64,000 nt of DNA, from the NCBI GenBank assembly GCA_002269645.1, contig NIVC01002026.1, forward strand, positions 62,001-126,000, written 5' to 3'. The DNA comes from Macrostomum lignano (Eukaryota). Of the stretch, positions 4,190 to 57,902 are shown piece by piece. Numbering within the stretch: the stretch's first letter is position 1; each line of letters opens with the position of its first letter. The translations under genes and the position numbers were made by a program. The notes beneath the pieces are model-generated. The model did no database searches and was not told the origin of the DNA. It was given only the letters and a program-made list of their open reading frames with translations.

Positions 4190-4810
<621 letters not shown>

Positions 4811-4976: not shown

Positions 4977-7900
4977 ATGGAAGCTCTTTGGAGAATCCTG
5001 ACAGCGATTGCAGCAGTTCTGATGCAGACCTTCGGCAGGTCCGCAGGCCAAAGCGAGGGCCTTGATGGCACTGAGCAGGAGATCCTGGAAGCTGTTATGT
5101 TCGAAAATGAAACAAAAGTTTCACGATACCTGCAGACGCCTCATAACGTTGATAGGCTCTTCAGCATCAATGGGATGATATTCTCACCGCTTCACTTTGC
5201 GTGTGAAAAGGGAAAAGACAAAATTGTCGAAATGTTCATTCGAGCCCAAGCTGACGTCAATCTTCAACTAAACACTGGCGAGTCACCTCTATACATTGCA
5301 TCACAGGAGGGTCACCACCAAGTTGTGAGCTCACTCATCAAAGCACAAGCTGACGTCAATCTTCAACAAGTCGATGGCCGCTCACCTCTCTACATTGCAT
5401 CACAGAATGCTCACCGCCAAGTTGTGAGCTCACTCATTAAAGCACAAGCTGACGTCAATCTTCAACGAAACACTGCTGAGTCACCTCTCTACATTGCATC
5501 ACATAATGGTCACCACCAAGTTGTGAGCTCACTCATCAAAGCACAAGCTGACGTCAATCTTCAACGAAACACTGGCGAGTCACCTCTCTACATTGCATCA
5601 CAGAAGGGCCACCACCAAGTTGTGAGCTCACTCATCAAAGCACAAGCTGACGTCAATCTTCAACGAAACACTGCTGAGTCACCTCTCTACATTGCATCGA
5701 TTTTTGGTCACCACAAAGTTGTGAGCTCACTCATCAAAGCACAAGCTGACGTCAATCTTCAACGAAACAATGGCGAGTCACCTCTCTACATTGCATCACA
5801 GAATGGTCACCACCAAGTTGTGAGCTCACTCATCAAAGCACAAGCTGACGTCAATCTTCAACGAAACACTGCTGAGTCACCTCTCTACATTGCATCAGGG
5901 AAGGGTCACCATCAAGTTGTGAGCTCACTCATCAAAGCACAAGCTGACGTCAATCTTCAACTAAACACTGGCGAGTCACCTCTCTACATTGCATCACTGC
6001 AAGGTCATCACCAAGTAGTAAGCTCACTCATCAAAGCACAAGCTGACGTCAATCTTCAACAAGATGATGGCTGCTCACCTCTCTACATTGCATCACAGAA
6101 TGGTCACCACCAAGTAGTGAGCTCACTCATCAAAGCACAAGCTGACGTCAATCTTCAAGACGTCGATGGTTGCTCACCTCTCTACATTGCATCACAGAAT
6201 GGTCACCACCAAGTTGTGAGCTCACTCATCAAAGCACAAGCTGACGTTAATCTTCAAGAAGTCGATGGCTGCTCACCTCTTTACATTGCATCACAGAATG
6301 GTCACCACCAAGTTGTGAGCTCACTCATCAAAGCACAGGCTGACGTCAATCTTCAACGAAACACTGGCGCGTCACCTCTCTACATTGCATCACTGCAAGG
6401 TCACCACCAAGTTGTGAGCTCACTCATCAAAGCACAAGCTGAAGTCAATCTTCAACGAAACACTGGCGAGTCACCTCTCTACATTGCATCACTGCAAGGT
6501 CACCACCAAGTTGTGAGCTCACTCATCAAAGCACAAGCTGACGTCAATCTTCAACGAAACACTGGCGAGTCACCTCTCTACATTGCATCAGGGAAGGGTC
6601 ACCACCAAGTTGTGAGCTCACTCATCAAAGCACAAGCTGACGTCAATCTTCAACGAAACACTGGCGAGTCACCTCTCTACATTGCATCAGGGAAGGGTCA
6701 CCACCAAGTTGTGAGCTCACTCATCAAAGCACAAGCTGAAGTCAATCTTCAACGAAACACTGGCGAGTCACCTCTCTACATTGCATCACAGAATGGTCAC
6801 CACCAAGTTGTGAGCTCACTCATCAAAGCACAAGCTGACGTGAAGGGTGTACATATTGATTGTCAAGAAGTGGCTAAAAGTACATTCGCTGTGGAGTTGC
6901 CACCGAAACAGTTAGATTTTGGGTAAGATTCATTTTTGATTCTAAATAACTATTTTGATTAGTTTTTCACGGATCCGAAGAAGATTAGGCAATTGTGCAA
7001 GCAAGCGGTCATGAGAGGCAGTGTTGGCAGTTGGCAGTTTGCAGCAGAAAAGCTTGCAAACAGGTGAAAGCGAGAGCTTGCTGAATGCTGAGTCAAGATG
7101 AATTTAACATGGCTGATATCACAGGCAAGTATATGTGCTCACGGGGTTTATCCCTGTTGCAAGTAAATGCAATGTGAATGTGGAGTTCAGGACCCCATCT
7201 GCCGCCATCCCCATAATCGGCATCGTCAGCAAATCAGGTTTTCCGATTTACTCGGACCGCTCAGACCTGTTCGACCAATAAAGTTCCCTCGTAACCATGC
7301 CACTCTACAGACACTCTAATGGGCAGTCACGGAAATTGGACCATTTTCAGGGGCACACATTTTCTCCGGACACTGGGCTCACCTATGGACCCACCTTCAG
7401 CATGCTCCAGTCCACCTCCAGCATGCCCCACCCCACCTCCAGCATGCCCCACGCCACCTCCAGCCTGCCCCACCCCTCCTCCGGCCTGCTCCACTCTACA
7501 TCCAGGTCTCTGAATCTAAAGTATCAAATCCTCATCGCTGAATCAACTCTTTTCCCACCTGCCAACCATACACAGACACTCTGCATGGGACACTGTATGG
7601 GCAGTCATGGAAATTGTACAATTTTTCAGTAACAAAGCATGCACACATTTGCTCTAAACTAAACTAAAAGAACAATTAAAGGATCAACTGCCTGCAAAAT
7701 GATCAGCAAAATCAATTCATGCACTGTTCGGGAGGGCTGCCCTGTGCTACAAAAATCAGTCAAATAACCCGTCTAGACCTGCAAGTTTTTCACCTATAAC
7801 TCACATTTCAGATGCAGTCCCAGCGACTCAGAGCTGAGCCATCAGCTGCACTCAGCACTGGAGCAGTCAGGCTTCACCGAATCCCGAGCCGCATTGCAGA

Positions 7901-9969
7901 GCGCGGCTGCCGATGTCCTGCAGCAGATTCTGAGAAGTCGACTGGATGATAATCCATTTTTTGTGGTCGGCAGCTACTCAGAAGGCTGGGGCAACAACCT
8001 GACGACACTGGACGGCAGAACTGACGCCAATTCCGACATTGATGTGATGCATTTGATTTCTGGCCGAGAATACCACCAGAAAAGTCTGTGCGAGTGCGAT
8101 GGAGCTTCGGAGCAGCACGAGCTGGTGAACGGGCACATTCAGTGCTCAGGATTCGGTGAGTTCTCTCTTGGGGAGTGAGATTGTCTGGTAGTTTTGTTAT
8201 GACTGTTAGAGATTGCTAAGAAAACTTGGCAAGATTGTTGGTTTTAAATTTTTGTAGGATTGGTAAAAGTGGAGCAATGCTATGGAGGACTCAGTGAAAA
8301 ACTGTTCATTTTAGCAGCTTTTTGCATTTTTAGGTAAGAAGACTCGAATTTAGGGAACTTATAGGTAGCCTGTGACCTCTCCGTAGTGAGTTTAGGGTGG
8401 GTGCAAATATCGTGTCATTTGGTTGGGCGGTTTCTAAAGCTGCATATTTCCCGAACAGTCCAAGGCATCACCGCACAGACTCAAAGCTGTATATTCCCCA
8501 ATCGGGAACCGAATCGTTTTTACAGCCTCCAACCCTGCTCATGCGACACCCGGATGCCCGCTGAGGCCAGCGCTGGACAATGTCGACGCATGCCGTCTCT
8601 GCCGCTACCCGCCCATCACGCCGCTGCTGCCAAACCGCGTCTCCAACATCCCCCATCCGGTGTTGGAGGCTCTCCAGAAGGTTCTCACCTCCGCCTCATC
8701 GCCCTGTCACGTGGTGCACGCAGCCTCTCCTGACCGAGGAGGCGAAGAGCTCCGCGTGAGCACCAGCTTCCTGGAGAACCGGATGCTGCGAAGTCTCACT
8801 ACCCTGCAAGGCCAACTGTTCGTCACACTCAAATACCTGGTCAAGAAGGTCATCTGTCACAAGAATGGCTTGAATTCCTACCACGTGAAGACCATCGCCT
8901 TCCGAATGGTGGCTGAGACGCCGGTCGAGCAGTGGAAGAAGGAGAACCTCGTGAGTCTCACGAGACAGTCGCTGCAGATGCTGCTCGACTGTGTGGAGAA
9001 GAGCCGAGAGCAGGACAGACAAACACCTGACACACCTGACCGATCTCGGGTCGCATCATGAATCATTTCTTTCTCAGCGATGCGGCCATCTACCTCAAGG
9101 GTGCGGACAAGGAGAGAGCGGACCAGCATTTGGACGGCATCATGAGCACACTGAGAACAGGAATCGATCGGCTGCCCCAACTGCTGCAGCAGTTCATCGG
9201 CAGTCTCAGACCTGTGAGCGACTCAGGCACATTCTACTTCCACCCGTTCCAAATCCTGCCGGATCTGAGGCCGATGTCCCTCACGAAGTCCAGTGCTCTC
9301 GAGTACTATCAGATCTACGACGTGGTGAGAGAGTGTCTGGTGCGTCTCTCGCGCAGTGACTGCAGCCAGCGATCTCAGGAGTCGCTCACAGAGCTGATTG
9401 CCAGACTGCCAGACTGCACCCTCTCAGCACGGGAGGCTCTCAGAGCGCTGGCTTGCCTGAAGTTCGGCTACCGAGAAACTGCAGAGAGAGTCGTGAGCTC
9501 GTGCTTAGGTCACTCGGTGAGCAGAGGCATCGCTTGGTCTCGTGAGAAGTCGGCGACTGAAGCGACTGTGGAGTTCGTGATGCGGCATCTGAGCAGCCGC
9601 GACTCGGCGTGGAAGTTTTGCTTTGAGTTCGACCAGCGACCGAAACTCGAGTTCTTGACAGGAGCTCTGAGGGAGTGCTTTCCCCTCCGGTTGTCGAGCA
9701 GAGCTGACCATTTCTACATGAACTTTGATGCTCTGCTGTGGGCTCTGCGGCTCGAGCTGCGGACTGATCGAGAAGCGTGCGCTCAGGACTGGATCCGGGA
9801 TGTGGCTGAGAGAGAGGACTCGGATGAGCAGGAGGTGCTGGTTGCCGCTTTGAATTCTTCAAATCTGGAGCAGATTCTGGAAATAGTAAAGAAGCTGAAG
9901 ATGATGAGGGCAGATCTTCTCAGTTGGCTGAAGGCGAGACTTCTGGAAAAATGGAGCGATCGAACTTAG
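4977..9969 (+). CDS. Ankyrin-repeat + Mab-21/cGAS-like nucleotidyltransferase (cGLR-type) fusion protein, about 1244 aa; exons 4977-6922, 7812-8155, 8526-9969; apparent 1-nt frameshift at 9048-9050
   Basis: Exon 1 has 17 ANK repeats (SPLYIAS..GHHQVVSSLIKAQADVNLQ). Donor GG|gtaag at 6922 joins acceptor tttcag|A at 7812 in phase 2 (GGA). Donor G|gtgag at 8155 joins acceptor tttacag|CC at 8526 in phase 1 (GCC). Motifs: VGSYSEG...SDIDVM, VDAC, ELRVSTSFLENRML, LKY, SYHVKT, W, NHFF, matching the order in Mab-21/cGAS-family proteins. One extra G at 9048-9050 gives DRSRGRIMNHFF and a total of 3735 nt. Confidence 0.85.
5184..6845 (+). repeat. Coding 99-bp tandem array: 1 divergent + 16 near-identical ankyrin repeats
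   Basis: 33-aa periodicity in ORF 4977..6926; the DNA units differ at only a few codons. Confidence 0.95.
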
Positions 9970-11069
9970 GAAGTTTCGAGTAAAAAACAAAAACTGTTTT
10001 GCTGGTGAGCTGGTAATTAATATTTCTATTTTCCCAAATTATCCGACTGCTCTGATATTCCTCTTCCATTTTCGCATTGAGTCGGCATCCCCGAGAACTT
10101 CAGCTCATTAACATGTACTTTACTGCCATCTGGGTCATTGTCCTTGAATTCGTTGGAAATTTCGATTTTTTAAACAAAATTTTCAGTGTAACATTTTGTT
10201 ATAAATGTCTCATTATCGAATTTAGCAAATTCCGCTTCATCAGTAGCTTACTGACCGCTTTCGCACTCGGATATTTTATGACTTCACGGTGCTTCAGTTC
10301 CACCGCGTTTTGACTGCTGCAGTAGAAATGGTAAAATACCATTTAGCCAGTCAGCCATATAATTCTGAGATACGAGCATGATGACAATGGCTTATTTTTG
10401 TCAAAATAAGTGAGCGCAGTCTTGAGCCGTAAGGAGCGGGTGGTTAGAGAGGCCAGCTTAACCTCAAGCAGTAATTATGCTATTCTCAGGCTGCACATCG
10501 CTCTTCTAGCCTCCCTGCAACCAGCGATGCTGTGCTCGGTGTGTTTTGAGCAGTGAGCTGGATGGAGTTGCATTCTAGCCAGACTTGTTTTTTGTCTCTG
10601 AGACAGGGGGGTTGGCGTTTCGAGAGGCGTTTCGAGAGGCCTGTATGGGGCAGTTGCCAACTCAAAGCAGTCTCATCGCAATGCAGACAAAGCACTGCCA
10701 CTGCTGAGCTGGGTGGGGCCGCTCCAGATGAAGGTTGGAGACTGCAGGCGCGTTTTTAGTGCTTTGCTTTTGCAATGTCGCCTCCGGCGTTTTTGGCAAT
10801 TTTGGCTTTGGTTTTTCAAAACGCAAAACGCATTGAAATGAGAGATGAAGGTCATCTGCAGACCCTTACTCAAATTAATAAGCTGTCGCAGGAGGGCTGC
10901 AGCCACCCTGGCACAACGCCTTCGGCGACCTCAGTCCCACATCCCACGGCAATTCAGCCCATTCCGCTAAATCCTGAGCCATGCAAGCTCGCCAATGCTG
11001 TACGCAGGCACTCATGCACAGTGGTCCCACAGGGTGTACAGCGGCCCTAACTTTCTCATCGTCTAATCA

Positions 11070-11560
11070 GCTTGGCTGCCATCTGCATGTACCCGCCCTG
11101 GAGATCTGCTCCCTCTTCCATCTGCATGTACCTGCCCCGGAGATCTGCTCCCTCTTCCATCTGCATGTACATCAATCTGCCCTGGAGATCTGCTCCCTCT
11201 TCCATCTGCATGTACCTGCCCCGGAGATCTGCTCCCTCTTCCATCTGCATGTACATCAATCTGCCCCGGAGATCTGCTCCCTCTTCCATCTGCATGTACA
11301 TCAATCTGCCCCGGAGATCTGCTCCCTCTTCCATCTGCATGTACATCAATCTGCCCCGGAGATCTGCTCCCTCTTCCATCTGCATGTACATCAATCTGCC
11401 CCGGAGATCTGCTCCCTCTTCCATCTGCATGTACATCAATCTGCCCCGGAGATCTGCTCCCTCTTCCATCTGCATGTACATCAATCTGCCCCGGAGATCT
11501 GCTTCCTCTTCCATCTGCATGTACATCAATCTGCCCCGGAGATCTGCTCCCTCTTCCATC
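11070..11560. repeat. 45-bp (some 39-bp) minisatellite
   Basis: CCGGAGATCT recurs at 11221 and 11266. Confidence 0.9.
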
Positions 11561-12454
11561 TGCCGCTATCCAACAGCCATGAAAGAAGGCCGGCTCCCAA
11601 GCCACAGAGAGTGAACTCAGGGCCGCTGTACACCCTGTGTGAGCATTGCGTATGAGTGCTGTGCCTGCGTACAGTATTGGCGCGCTTGCAAGTGCTCTAT
11701 CAGGATCTGGGAGCAGCCATCAGCAGCCAATTTCAATAATCAAAATTTCAACCGCCTGGCTTTGCTTTGCCTTCAAGCAGAAACCGCACTGAAGTGCTCC
11801 TTTACTTCACCGCCAGCCGCCACCATTGAAAAGCAAATTCGCATTTTCAAGCGGCTTCAATTAAGCTCATCAGTGTTTTCACCTGGGTTTCTGATCACCG
11901 GAGTTGAGCAAAAAAAGGCTTCAGTCCTTAATTACCGCAGTGTGAGCTCTGGAGAAGCGCAGCTTGCAGCGGAGCGGAAAAAGCAGCCACCTCTACTCGT
12001 CTCAACCGCAGCCACCCGAGCAGCCCAGCTCCAGACCAGCCCAACTCAATGCTCAGAGGACAATGGGTGAATGCTGAGGCTTGAGGGCCGAGCCAGCAGC
12101 CTGCGAACGCGTGGCACAGAAGGCTCGCAGCAAATGCTTTGGGTTTGGGGGGGGGGGCTGATGTTTTCCTAGCAATGGCACAGAGAGAATCTGTGAGCGC
12201 CAACCCTGCCTGCTCAAAGCATTCATTGCCTGTGCGTTCTCAGCGAGACTATAGAGAATTCACTGCCTTGAGTATTCGGTTTGGAGAGTTTGAGATGAGG
12301 GCCTCGCAGACTCATAAGAATAATAATAGGGGCTTTAGAGGCCGGCGTGCTTGGCTGTCCCTCTGTATTAAGATAGCAGAAAAATAAGCTTATGTGTGCA
12401 GCATGGCAGACATTCAACTCATTGGACAATTAAATGCTCACTAATTCATTTTCT

Positions 12455-25706: not shown

Positions 25707-27121
25707 TTAGTTCTTCCTTGTAAAAAAGGAACCGATTTTGATGTCACTCAAAACTTTAGACACATTAACCAGTTCGAGGGCGTACTCACGAGTTTTCATC
25801 GCGGTGCCACCCCAGCTCGTTTCGCTCTTCCGCATGTCGTGAACAGCGTACACAGTTGGCGACGAGTCTGTAACAGGGTTGTAATTGGTGATGTTTGAGC
25901 ACAGCTGCGTCAGGTTCTTCACCTTTCTGAGAAGCTTCATGCTGGAGTCTTTGGTGTCGTTCAGTTTCCTGCAGCTAATGCTCATCTTGGACAGTCGATA
26001 GTTTCGAAAATTCGTCGAAACGCCGCTCAAAGAGTTGTTCTCGTACGGATAGAAGCTGAACGATGGCGGCACGTACACCGCTTCCATCGAGTCGTTTGTC
26101 AGCGGATGCTTGGCATTGTACCGCTCCAAGATTCTCGTCAGTCCAACTGGTCCAGCAAAGCCGAGAATGTCCCAGTTCGGCCGAATGAGAGACAGCTGGT
26201 CGAGCACAAACCTGTAGAACTTGTGCCCTGGCGCAGACATGAGGAAGGCGGGACTGGCCACAGGTCTAATGGGCCAGTGAGGCCCGAACAGCTGCAGCGA
26301 GTGCGTCTCCGGCTCGCGAGTGACCACCGCGTAGAAGCGACGAAACTCGTCCAGGTTTCGCGTCAGGCTGTAGTCCAGGTCTGCGTACGTGCCGCCGAGC
26401 TTCAAAAACCCAAAAATATTTCTGTATGATTTCCGCTTAAAAAGAAGTCAACTGCATGCTTTAGGAGCGTAAAAGGTAATTTTTAATTGAGGAATAAGTA
26501 AATATGACTAGTATAGTGTTTCAGTATTCTGTGAATGCTCGATAGTGCTTTACCTACCTTATACATCAGCATGTAGCGGAACATGTCAACCTTCATGATG
26601 TGCATCTTCTGAGACTTGAATTGCTTCAACAGTTTGGGAAAATTTTCAGCCACGAATGGATCCATATCCTTGTCGCGCCACAGCACGTGGATCCAATCGG
26701 GGTGAAGTTTCTGCCAAGTTTTTATGTGCTCGACAAAGTACTTGGACACGAACTCGTTGCGCCAGAGAATGTGCCGGATCTTCGGTATCGGGAAGATGCC
26801 TCTTTTGTGCAGGCTGGTCTCGTAGTCCAGCCGGCAGCTCTCGTTTGCGCAGACAGCCGGCAGCCAAGTCTTTGGTTTCAATTGTACTTTTCTGTTTGGT
26901 AATTTCGATGTTAAGTCGGATTGAATCAGAGTAGCATTTCCTCCATTCCTGTTGAATGCATTGAACAAGGTGGCAAGAAAAACCGGATGCCTGCTTGTCT
27001 TTGTCGACAGCGTCGCTATCTGAGTTATTGCGGCGTAGACCAGTAGAATAACGAAAACAGCAAACAGAATTTTGCGCCACTTGTCGCATCGAAACTTTTG
27101 GACTTTTACGAAAAAAATCAT
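25707..27121 (-). CDS. GT32-family DxD glycosyltransferase, type II membrane; exons 27121-26558 and 26399-25707
   Basis: N-terminal TM segment ILFAVFVILLVYAAI; motifs IPKIRHILW, HPDW..VLW.D, VDMFRY, YK|LGGTYADLD; phase-0 GT-AG intron (aag|gtaggt ... tttgaag|CTC). Confidence 0.85.
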
Positions 27122-27644
27122 TTTTATCAAACGGTGGCTTTTTAAATCCACTTATTTTTGCACTTGTATTTTGTAAAATGCTTTCCTAGCAGACTAATTA
27201 AGACGTCCTATTTCGACTTCTGTTTTTTACCTTGCTTATTTCAATCACCGATTGGCTATTCCAACTAATCCACAATCACTGGCCAAACCATTCTGTCCGG
27301 AGAGGTATCTACGTCAGTCTAGCTCCTTACCGGTGCGCTATCAGTTTGGGATAGGACAAATCGGGTAGCTCATTCCTACCTGACCAAGCCTAGAAATGTA
27401 CATTCTGTAACCGTCCACGGATGAATTGGGGCTTTCTGCATTAAATTTTAAGATAGCTGGAGTTTGCGTTAAATACATCCAACTTCCTGAAGGAATAAAG
27501 TAAGGCTTTTTCTGAAACTTCTTTTTTCAATTTCTGGACTCCTATATTAACATCTTCTCTGTCGTTTTCAAGTCATTAAGACTTCGTTGCTGCGGTTATT
27601 CGTTGTCAATGTCTGTTGTGTTGGAGCGAGTCTGGTATTGTCTG

Positions 27645-35483: not shown

Positions 35484-57902
<22,419 letters not shown>

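What the first reader, a model, noticed from the sequence alone, without database searches (positions are those of the whole stretch)
4977..9969. Ankyrin-array / cGAS-like (Mab-21) nucleotidyltransferase fusion: candidate variable-sensor second-messenger receptor
Seen: a 17-repeat ANK exon splices in matching phase to exons with GS..EG...SDID, a third Asp (VDAC) and the Mab-21 C-lobe motifs (RVSTSFLE, SYHVKT, NHFF). Established: cGAS/cGLR enzymes are innate-immune receptors that make cyclic dinucleotides when they bind ligand, and ANK arrays are protein-binding scaffolds. Inference: the ANK array may supply target specificity, possibly for proteins rather than nucleic acids, and gate nucleotide-signal synthesis. 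This would be a sensor-enzyme design analogous to NLRs or bacterial CBASS. Accessory-domain fusions are known for some invertebrate Mab-21 proteins, so novelty must be checked. No STING-like gene was seen in this window.
Basis: partly seen in the sequence, partly recalled or inferred. Interest (0 to 1): 0.9.

Follow-up and report, generated by a model that had tools for sequence, protein, structure and literature searches.

The report
Flatworm ankyrin–cGAS-like receptor gene
This is one three-exon gene of the flatworm Macrostomum lignano that joins 17 ankyrin repeats to a cGAS-like enzyme domain; that class of fusion is already catalogued, but its repeats vary almost only at their ligand-contact positions, and this copy carries a one-base frame break.

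Summary
Exon 1 (4977-6922) encodes a short leader and 17 ANK repeats. It joins in phase, through GT-AG introns, to exons 7812-8155 and 8526-9969.

Those exons encode a domain whose AlphaFold model (pLDDT 87.7) matches cGAS, Sp-cGLR1, MAB21L1 and MB21D2. G-S, D-x-D and a third Asp are conserved across paralogues.

Two corrections:
- The conserved third Asp is the D of "ALD" (8576-8578), not the D of "VDAC".
- The frame breaks at 9047-9049. A GGG run here is GGGG in the Mlig_3_7 assembly, so NHFF and the last 303 codons are out of frame as written. Restoring one G gives 1,244 aa, and residues 654-1244 are identical to BOX15_Mlig022050g1.

The fusion is real. Paralogues about 57% identical keep the same intron positions and phases, with introns of about 100 nt, in RNA-seq-based gene models.

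It is not a new design. Li et al. 2023 list ANK-cGLR fusions, tabulate M. lignano ones, and cloned five relatives.

Apparently undescribed:
- ANK codon variants are 20 nonsynonymous to 1 synonymous at seven binding-surface positions, against 4 to 12 in the framework.
- There is a 250-aa C-terminal domain with no match among solved (PDB) structures.
- Distant paralogues carry a caspase domain.

Catalysis, ligand and downstream receptor remain untested.

The parts
4977..6922 (+). Exon 1. It holds the start codon, a 20-residue hydrophobic leader (MEALWRILTAIAAVLMQTFG) and the whole ANK array. It ends in phase 2 inside a Gly codon (GG|A).
   Evidence: ORF and splice context. The leader is shared with paralogues P0006, P0020 and P0040.
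5160..6842 (+). 17 ankyrin repeats of 33 aa. Repeat 1 is divergent. Repeats 2-17 (5259-6842) are near-identical 99-nt units (mean 91% nt identity) that vary at unit positions 4-8 and 16-17.
   Evidence: Pfam Ank, 17 stretches. TRF. Repeat table. Nucleotide differences from the consensus: 72 nonsynonymous to 1 synonymous at variable codons, 5 to 13 at framework codons. Distinct codon states: 20 to 1 against 4 to 12.
6923..7811 (+). Intron 1 (GT..AG, 889 nt). It contains a 21-nt minisatellite at 7390-7505.
   Evidence: Colinearity with Mlig_3_7 contig NIVC01001460.1 starts at 7431, inside this minisatellite.
7812..8155 (+). Exon 2: the NTase spine helix and N-lobe. G-S is at 7969-7974 and D-I-D at 8035-8043.
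   Evidence: Translation. G49, S50, S70, D71 and D73 of P0001 are invariant in 13 family members. These residues are within the transcript-based protein P0001.
8156..8525 (+). Intron 2 (GT..AG, 370 nt), phase 1 inside an Ala codon.
   Evidence: P0001 reads straight across this junction (..QCSGFASNPAH..). The P0005 locus has the same position and phase.
8526..9969 (+). Exon 3: the third catalytic Asp (8576-8578), the Mab-21 C-lobe (RVSTSFLE, SYHVKT, NHFF), the C-terminal domain and the stop TAG at 9967-9969.
9047..9049 (+). Frame break: GGG here, GGGG in Mlig_3_7. As written, translation stops at TGA 9059-9061 after 941 aa. With one G restored the ORF is 1,244 aa.
   Evidence: Paralogues P0002 and P0003 read ..DRSRGRIMNHFF.. 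through this point.
9205..9966 (+). Family-specific C-terminal domain of about 250 aa. It is mostly helical and has no significant match among solved (PDB) structures.
   Evidence: AlphaFold pLDDT 83.2, pTM 0.85. Best Foldseek PDB E about 0.9. No Pfam hit. Conserved in paralogues.

Best explanation
What it is (shown). This is one gene of Macrostomum lignano. It encodes, in order:
- a short hydrophobic leader;
- 17 ankyrin repeats;
- a cGAS/Mab-21-fold nucleotidyltransferase (cGLR-type) domain with G-S, D-x-D and a third Asp intact;
- a family-specific C-terminal helical domain of about 250 aa.

It belongs to a large expansion of ANK-cGLR genes. All nine named clusters sampled were M. lignano. 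Some members lie in tandem, with ANK arrays that differ in repeat number.

How it most likely works (inferred). The concave face of the ANK array binds a ligand, more probably a protein or another non-nucleic-acid molecule than DNA or RNA. The array is built from one framework plus a small set of interchangeable contact-residue cassettes. Binding activates the NTase to make a nucleotide second messenger for innate immune or cell-death signalling. The receptor for that signal is unknown.

This copy (shown). As assembled, it has a one-base deletion in a G run that truncates the protein at 941 aa. This is probably an assembly error, or else a very recent null allele.
For: Species and family:
- 38 homologues, nearly all M. 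lignano, many ANK plus Mab-21_C.
- An exhaustive phmmer search of 1.84 billion representatives gives only 178 hits. Of 10 clusters sampled, 9 are M. lignano.

One gene:
- The splice sites are phase-matched.
- The P0005 locus has introns of about 100 nt at the same positions and phases.
- Two tandem copies in L002 show the same three-exon layout.
- BOX15 gene models are RNA-seq based (PMC5730564).
- P0001 is annotated 5'-partial, starting 13 nt into exon 2.

Fold:
- AlphaFold pLDDT 87.7, pTM 0.89.
- Foldseek top hits are cGAS (E 1.7e-6, probability 1.0), Sp-cGLR1, MAB21L1, MB21D2, MiD51 and CdnE.

Sequence link:
- The family profile matches cGAS at E 2.5e-5.
- The weaker phmmer hits carry PF03281 plus PF20266.
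- The third-Asp strand aligns with theirs.

Active site: G49, S50, D71 and D73 are invariant and D128 is present in 12 of 13 members.

Sensor role of the ANK array:
- Nonsynonymous change is confined to positions 4-8 and 16-17 of the unit.
- The same positions and the same cassettes recur in two other arrays.

Ligand type: the NTase domain has pI 6.56, whereas Li et al. report pI above 8.5 for nucleic-acid-sensing cGLRs.

Immune or cell-death context: distant paralogues are true cGLR-ANK-caspase fusions.

Frame break: it is one of only two indels against Mlig_3_7 in the 2.7 kb compared base by base (7431-10100), and both lie in homopolymer runs. The downstream 303 codons are 100% identical to P0001.
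Against: - No enzymatic activity is shown for any family member. Li et al. cloned five M. lignano relatives, and the phyla they name for their 15 active enzymes do not include flatworms.
- The residue before G-S is Val, not the Q/T of their motif. The G-S to D-x-D spacing is 20 residues, the upper limit of their motif.
- Pfam Mab-21_C scores 22.4 bits, below the 24.1 cut-off, and PF03281 does not hit.
- Wu et al. 2014 report cGAS and STING as lost in flatworms, on the basis of Schistosoma. STING in M. lignano was not tested here.
- The exon 1 to exon 2 junction has no direct transcript evidence at this locus. No annotated protein contains this ANK exon. In Mlig_3_7 the sequence upstream of intron 1 is a satellite array instead.
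- The hypervariable codons were chosen after looking at the data.
- The variable residues come from a small shared cassette set, which gene conversion among repeats could also produce.
Confidence: 0.6

Rival explanations
1. It is a non-catalytic Mab-21-type scaffold. The NTase fold binds a nucleotide or a partner without making a signal, as in MAB21L1 or MiD49/MiD51. The ANK array only recruits proteins.
For: - MAB21L1 and MiD51 are among the Foldseek hits.
- The residue before G-S is Val, not Q/T, and there is a long 20-residue insert before D-x-D.
- The phyla Li et al. name for their 15 active enzymes do not include flatworms.
- STING is reported lost in flatworms.
Against: - G-S, D-x-D and the third Asp are invariant or nearly so across paralogues only 38-64% identical. 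Li et al. describe Mab21L1/2/3 as lacking a predicted functional active site.
- Li et al. curated M. lignano relatives into the set with complete active sites.
Confidence: 0.25
2. This copy is a pseudogene or null allele. The missing G is real, and the locus makes a 941-aa protein that lacks the end of the C-lobe and the C-terminal domain, or makes no stable product.
For: The frame break is in the sequence as given. M. lignano is a neopolyploid with redundant copies, with 180 Mb in duplicated blocks, so loss of one copy would be tolerated.
Against: - The only two indels against the other assembly in the 2.7 kb compared base by base are in homopolymer runs, which is typical of long-read error.
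- The 303 codons after the break are open and 100% identical to the transcript-based protein. There is one synonymous SNP and no other defect.
Confidence: 0.2
3. The ANK array is not a sensor. It acts as a localisation, oligomerisation or effector-recruitment module, while the NTase domain or the C-terminal domain senses the ligand.
For: - ANK-less relatives exist that keep the same leader (P0040).
- Some paralogues place further ANK repeats after the NTase, next to a caspase domain. That suggests an adaptor role.
- The C-terminal domain is conserved and has no assigned function.
Against: An adaptor that binds a fixed partner would be expected to conserve its contact residues. Here the framework is frozen and the contact positions carry nearly all the nonsynonymous change.
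Confidence: 0.15
4. The ANK exon and the NTase exons are separate genes that only lie next to each other.
For: In the Mlig_3_7 assembly, the sequence within 9.6 kb upstream of the NTase exons is a satellite array rather than the ANK exon. The annotated protein starts in exon 2.
Against: - That protein is flagged 5'-partial.
- Exon 2 has no in-frame start codon ahead of the G-S motif. The ATG at 7812 is out of frame (P0007).
- Exon 1 has no stop codon before its donor site.
- Paralogues with introns of about 100 nt have the identical layout.
Confidence: 0.03

Closest known systems
ANK-repeat cGAS-like receptors (cGLRs) catalogued by Li et al. 2023 (PMC9980059), including M. lignano PAA86972.1, PAA45980.1, PAA57558.1, PAA93208.1 and PAA68676.1
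   Same: - Same organism and the same architecture (ANK then cGLR).
- Same motifs (GS[FY][AS]E[GA]WGN .. SD[IV]D; RVS[TF]SFLE; TLQGQ; K[TS]YH[AV]KT; HFF).
- P0001 is 36% identical to PAA86972.1 (E 8e-67) and 31% identical to PAA93208.1 (E 4e-53) over the whole cloned span.
   Different: - This paralogue is annotated only as a 5'-partial protein without its ANK exon.
- Its array is long (17 repeats) and near-identical.
- I found no statement in that paper's text or held supplements about hypervariable ANK contact positions, the C-terminal domain or caspase-fused relatives.
cGAS and Sp-cGLR1 (PDB 4k97, 8sj2, 8gjy)
   Same: Bilobed NTase fold with a spine helix, catalytic G-S/D-x-D/D, and the C-lobe helix bundle (Foldseek E 1.7e-6 to 1e-5, target-normalised TM 0.51-0.53). 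Sequence match over the C-lobe.
   Different: - Only 13-15% identity.
- No zinc thumb was identified.
- Near-neutral to slightly acidic NTase domain (pI 6.56), against a basic nucleic-acid-binding surface.
- Extra ANK array and an extra 250-aa C-terminal domain.
- No activity, ligand or product is known.
MAB21L1 / MB21D2 / MiD51 (non-signalling or orphan Mab-21 proteins)
   Same: Same fold.
   Different: Li et al. describe Mab21L1/2/3 as lacking a predicted functional active site. This family keeps G-S, D-x-D and D.
Repeat-based innate receptors with diversified binding surfaces (NLR or TLR LRRs, lamprey VLRs) and designed ankyrin binders (DARPins)
   Same: - A constant repeat framework carries variation concentrated on the solvent-exposed binding positions. 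From my own knowledge of the DARPin design, its randomised positions 2, 3, 5, 13 and 14 correspond to unit positions 5, 6, 8, 16 and 17 here.
- The sensor array is fused to a signalling domain.
   Different: This is an analogy only. The repeat type differs from LRR receptors. There is no evidence of somatic diversification, and no ligand is known.
Bacterial CBASS CD-NTases (e.g. CdnE)
   Same: Distant structural relatives (Foldseek E 6e-4 to 1e-2). The concept of a sensor NTase that makes a nucleotide signal.
   Different: This is an intron-containing eukaryotic gene with no operon-linked effector. Similarity is much weaker than to animal cGLRs.

Membership tests
cGLR (criteria of Li et al. 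2023) | Active-site motif: G-S, then 8-20 residues, then [DE]h[DE]h, then 50-90 residues, then h[DE]h | tested here: met
   VVGS, 20 residues, DIDV, 52 residues, LDN. G49, S50, D71 and D73 are invariant and D128 is in 12 of 13 members.
cGLR (criteria of Li et al. 2023) | Q or T immediately before G-S (h[QT]GS) | tested here: not met
   The residue is Val (VVGS). The M. lignano proteins that Li et al. accepted also deviate here: VMGS, ILGS and VFGS, with only ITGS conforming.
cGLR (criteria of Li et al. 2023) | Homology across both the NTase core and the C-terminal helix bundle | tested here: met
   Foldseek alignments of 375-420 columns to cGAS and cGLR chains. phmmer hits to PF03281 plus PF20266 proteins cover residues 110-270. 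The family profile matches the cGAS C-lobe at E 2.5e-5.
cGLR (criteria of Li et al. 2023) | AlphaFold-predicted structural homology to known cGLR or CD-NTase enzymes | tested here: met
   Model pLDDT 87.7. Top hits are cGAS, Sp-cGLR1, MB21D2 and CdnE, all at probability 1.0.
cGLR (functional definition) | Ligand-stimulated synthesis of a nucleotide second messenger | not testable with these tools
   This needs biochemistry. The phyla Li et al. name for their 15 active enzymes do not include flatworms.
Pfam Mab-21 (PF03281 / PF20266) | Score at or above the Pfam gathering threshold | tested here: not met
   PF20266 scores 22.4 bits against a 24.1 cut-off. PF03281 gives no hit. Several paralogues carry a precomputed PF20266 assignment.
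Ankyrin-repeat proteins | Tandem 33-residue ANK repeats | tested here: met
   PF00023, 17 stretches, E 3.7e-114. Exact 33-residue spacing.
cGAS-STING pathway | A STING (or other cyclic-nucleotide) receptor encoded in the same genome | not tested
   There is none in the window. The M. lignano genome could not be searched with these tools. Wu et al. 2014 report STING as lost in Schistosoma.

The most novel reading that the evidence does not exclude
The M. lignano ANK-cGLR family is a germline-encoded, fast-evolving recognition repertoire. Modular ANK arrays are built from one frozen framework and a small alphabet of contact-residue cassettes, and they vary in number and order between tandem copies. 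These arrays bind pathogen or danger proteins and gate cGLR nucleotide signalling. This occurs in a phylum generally thought to have lost cGAS-STING. Some paralogues are wired directly to a caspase domain. That would make it an NLR-like, protein-sensing branch of cGLR immunity.
Probability: 0.2. Interest if true: 0.8.

Novelty: new member of a known kind. Interest (0 to 1): 0.45.

Why it matters
Most animal cGLRs are orphans. Only double-stranded DNA and RNA are established ligands, and whether any cGLR senses proteins is an open question.

An expanded family whose appended ANK arrays vary almost only at their contact residues gives a concrete place to test that idea. One could swap arrays, pull down ligands, and assay the NTase with and without the array.

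The family also shows that a free-living basal flatworm keeps, and has greatly expanded, a cGLR family, although the phylum is usually described as having lost the pathway.

For genome annotation, the finding flags three things:
- a gene whose ANK exon is missing from the public gene models;
- a probable homopolymer error in this assembly;
- a structural difference between assemblies inside intron 1.

Tried and rejected
1. A short intron as the cause of the frame break. Removing 9008-9054 (47 nt) restores the frame and gives CVEKSR|IMNHFF, which resembles cGAS. But the segment has no GT-AG, and paralogues P0002 and P0003 and the transcript-based P0001 translate straight through it. Rejected in favour of a 1-nt indel.
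2. Family profile with ANK columns against PDB sequences. Ankyrin proteins swamped the result, so it was uninformative. I repeated it with an NTase-only alignment.
3. hhalign of the family against four coral cGLRs. It was statistically weak (E 0.034, probability 1.5%). I used it only as a pointer to the third-Asp strand, which searches then confirmed.
4. Search with the leader plus the first ANK repeats for an annotated full-length counterpart. It returned only generic ANK proteins.
5. Paralogues, caspase or STING elsewhere in the window. tblastn found none.
6. Literature searches for Macrostomum together with cGAS-like, cGLR or STING. Nothing beyond the supplements of Li et al.
7. A database search for an M. 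lignano STING. Not attempted. The word-indexed search would fill up with vertebrate STINGs, and the exhaustive search accepts only window-derived queries.
8. Structure search of the C-terminal domain. No significant PDB match. The BFVD viral library was not tried.


Full report
**Source and gene model**

The window is eukaryotic. Every close protein relative comes from the free-living flatworm Macrostomum lignano.

| Feature | Coordinates | Boundary sequence |
|---|---|---|
| Exon 1 | 4977-6922 | donor GG\|gtaaga |
| Exon 2 | 7812-8155 | acceptor tttcag\|A, donor TTCG\|gtgagt |
| Exon 3 | 8526-9969 | acceptor ttacag\|CC, stop TAG at 9967-9969 |

The phases match across both introns: phase 2 in a Gly codon, then phase 1 in an Ala codon.

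**The frame break**

It is not.
- The frame that carries RVSTSFLE and SYHVKT ends at TGA 9059-9061.
- The ORF that begins MNHFF (9058-9969) is in a different frame.

I first considered a small intron, because deleting 9008-9054 gives a cGAS-like CVEKSR|IMNHFF. That segment has no GT-AG, and paralogues translate through it.

The window aligns at 99.8% from 7431 to 11563 with contig NIVC01001460.1 of the Mlig_3_7 assembly (locus L001). A base-by-base comparison of 7431-10100 shows only two differences inside the gene:
- a G run of three here against four there (window 9047-9049);
- one synonymous T/C at 9063.

The only other indel nearby (10089) also lies in a homopolymer run.

Restoring one G gives a 3,735-nt CDS of 1,244 aa. 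Residues 654-1244 are identical to the annotated protein BOX15_Mlig022050g1 (P0001). As written, the window encodes 941 aa.

I judge an assembly error more likely than a null allele, but reads are needed to decide.

**Are the ANK and NTase parts one gene?**

Direct evidence at this locus is incomplete.
- P0001 is annotated 5'-partial and starts 13 nt into exon 2.
- In Mlig_3_7 the sequence upstream of the point matching window 7431 is a satellite array with a period of about 120 nt, with no ANK exon within 9.6 kb. The break in colinearity lies inside the 21-nt minisatellite of intron 1.
- No annotated protein in the collection contains this ANK exon.

Indirect evidence is strong.
- Many paralogue models combine ANK and the NTase. 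GenBank BOX15 models derive from a genome-guided RNA-seq transcriptome (PMC5730564).
- At the P0005 locus the whole gene is 2,858 nt for 890 aa. Its two introns of about 100 nt lie at the same positions and phases as here..LLSG|SALVEY.. and ..PGY|ASSPA...
- Two tandem copies in locus L002 show the same layout of an ANK exon, an exon of about 366 nt and an exon of about 1,450 nt.
- Exon 2 has no in-frame start codon before the G-S motif. Exon 1 has no stop codon before its donor.

**The enzyme domain**

Sequence methods alone are weak for this protein:
- Pfam Mab-21_C scores 22.4 bits, below the 24.1 cut-off, and PF03281 does not hit.
- cGAS chains match only over the C-lobe (E 0.04 for the single sequence, 2.5e-5 for a family profile).

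Structure is clearer. An AlphaFold model of P0001 with 21 family sequences has pLDDT 87.7 and pTM 0.89. Its best PDB matches are all at probability 1.0:
- cGAS (E 1.7e-6, target-normalised TM 0.51-0.53);
- Sp-cGLR1;
- MAB21L1;
- MB21D2;
- MiD51;
- bacterial CdnE.

An exhaustive phmmer search of 1.84 billion representatives found 178 relatives. The weaker ones (E 1e-5 to 1e-7) are canonical Mab-21 proteins with PF03281 and PF20266, and some have TPR tails. Pairwise alignment puts LDNVDAC opposite their VDYVHAL and KDMVQAF.

Across 13 family members that are 38-64% identical, G49, S50, S70, D71 and D73 are invariant, and D128 is present in 12.

So the third catalytic Asp is the D of ALD (8576-8578).

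The motif departs from Li et al.'s h[QT]GS in having Val before G-S. Its 20-residue spacer is at their upper limit.

**Two further parts of the protein**

- The last roughly 250 residues (9205-9966) form a confidently modelled, mostly helical domain (pLDDT 83.2). It has no significant PDB match and no Pfam hit, and it is conserved in the family.
- The first 20 residues (MEALWRILTAIAAVLMQTFG) form a hydrophobic leader shared with paralogues. Its role is unknown.

**The ANK array**

Repeat 1 is divergent. Repeats 2-17 are 99-nt units with 91% mean identity.

Variation from the consensus, split into seven codons at unit positions 4-8 and 16-17 and the other 26 framework codons:

| Measure | Positions 4-8 and 16-17 | Framework |
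|---|---|---|
| Nucleotide differences from consensus (nonsynonymous : synonymous) | 72 : 1 | 5 : 13 |
| Distinct codon states (nonsynonymous : synonymous) | 20 : 1 | 4 : 12 |

From my own knowledge of ankyrin structure, these positions are the beta-turn tip and the start of helix 1. They form the target-binding face and are the positions randomised in DARPins.

The two ANK arrays in L002 (16 and 11 units) vary at the same positions and reuse the same cassettes (RNTGE, LNTGE, EVDGC; QN, AY), on a different framework.

Caveats:
- I chose the variable codons after seeing the data.
- Repeated units are not independent.
- A small shared cassette set could reflect gene conversion as well as selection.

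**What is already known**

Li et al. 2023 (PMC9980059):
- define cGLRs by the criteria used above;
- state that 87% are stand-alone and that some carry TPR or ANK modules;
- say that most platyhelminths have no cGLR other than Mab21-like proteins.

Their Table S2 lists M. lignano proteins with Ank_2 domains. Their Table S3 lists five M. lignano constructs cloned for the screen. P0001 is 36% identical to one of these (E 8e-67) and 31% identical to another (E 4e-53).

The phyla they name for their 15 active enzymes do not include flatworms.

The architecture and this family's status as cGLRs are therefore catalogued. I found no main-text discussion of Macrostomum cGLRs anywhere.

**Mechanism**

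Shown: the gene structure, the fold, the conserved catalytic residues and the pattern of ANK variation.

Inferred: the ANK face binds a ligand and gates the synthesis of a nucleotide signal.

Points that bear on the inference:
- The NTase domain has pI 6.56, while paralogues range from 6.0 to 9.6. Li et al. report pI above 8.5 for nucleic-acid-sensing cGLRs. This weakly favours a non-nucleic-acid ligand for this member.
- An immune or cell-death setting is suggested by distant paralogues (about 31% identical) that are genuine cGLR-ANK-caspase fusions. Peptidase_C14 scores E 1e-25. One gene is 3,651 nt for 1,099 aa, and a single ORF spans the NTase C-terminal part and the ANK repeats.
- The downstream receptor is unknown. 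There is no STING-like sequence in the window. Wu et al. 2014 report STING as lost in Schistosoma. I could not search the M. lignano genome.

**Verdict**

This is a real gene and a real cGLR-type fusion.

It is a new member of a catalogued kind, not a new design, so the interest score is moderate. Most of that interest comes from the hypervariable ANK contact positions, the unassigned C-terminal domain and the caspase-fused relatives. None of these was mentioned in the literature text and supplements I could search.

Noticed in passing
L004 3001-6651 (Mlig_3_7 NIVC01002235.1); proteins P0084, P0192, P0096: Distant paralogues (about 31% identical) combine the cGLR-like domain, further ANK repeats and a caspase domain (Peptidase_C14, E 1e-25) in one gene with short introns. 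One ORF spans the NTase C-terminal part and the ANK repeats. I did not find this in the held text or supplements of Li et al. 2023.
   Followed up: partly
window 7390-7505 and L001 1-9606: Colinearity with the Mlig_3_7 contig begins at 7431, inside a 21-nt minisatellite in intron 1. Upstream of that point the other assembly has a long satellite with a period of about 120 nt in place of the ANK exon. This is either a structural haplotype difference or a misassembly.
   Followed up: partly
L002 (Mlig_3_7 NIVC01001606.1) 775-25445: At least two complete tandem copies of a paralogous ANK-cGLR gene lie here, plus a reverse-strand fragment. Their ANK arrays have 11 and 16 units. The annotated protein P0006 appears to join exon 1 of one copy to later exons of the other. 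P0039 fuses two complete units in one model.
   Followed up: partly
protein P0040 (UniRef A0A1I8IKY0): This relative, 90% identical in the NTase part, has the same leader (MEALWRILTAIAAVLMQNFG) joined almost directly to the NTase with no ANK repeats. It may be an ANK-less paralogue, an isoform or a collapsed assembly.
   Followed up: no
window 4977-5036: A 20-residue hydrophobic N-terminal leader (mean Kyte-Doolittle 1.29) is conserved in paralogues. In P0006 it contains a CC pair. It may be a membrane-association or lipidation signal on an otherwise cytosolic-looking protein.
   Followed up: no
window 4194-4808: A (TGTC)n microsatellite of about 154 copies ends 169 bp upstream of the start codon.
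   Followed up: no
window 11095-11563: A 45-nt tandem repeat of 10.7 copies lies about 1.1 kb downstream of the gene. It creates long spurious ORFs on both strands.
   Followed up: no
window 37042-37776 (-) and 56349-57902 (-): Exons of a class C GPCR on the minus strand: 7tm_3 (E 2.5e-68) and the ANF_receptor ligand-binding region (E 2.3e-66). If they belong to one gene, it spans about 20 kb.
   Followed up: partly
window 46726-51459: Three ORFs of 357 aa recur at exactly 1,830-bp spacing on the + strand. Pfam finds nothing in them. They probably reflect a long tandem repeat or repeated element.
   Followed up: no
window 26483-27151 (-): An ORF matches the glycosyltransferase DXD sugar-binding region (PF04488, E 2.5e-7).
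   Followed up: no
proteins P0024 (MetaClust), P0029 (JGI), P0032 (NCBI, 'Kangiellaceae bacterium' MAG, 1,065-bp contig): A few relatives 36-42% identical come from metagenomic sources. One is labelled bacterial but sits on a contig of about 1 kb. That is most likely eukaryotic (flatworm-like) DNA binned into a MAG.
   Followed up: no
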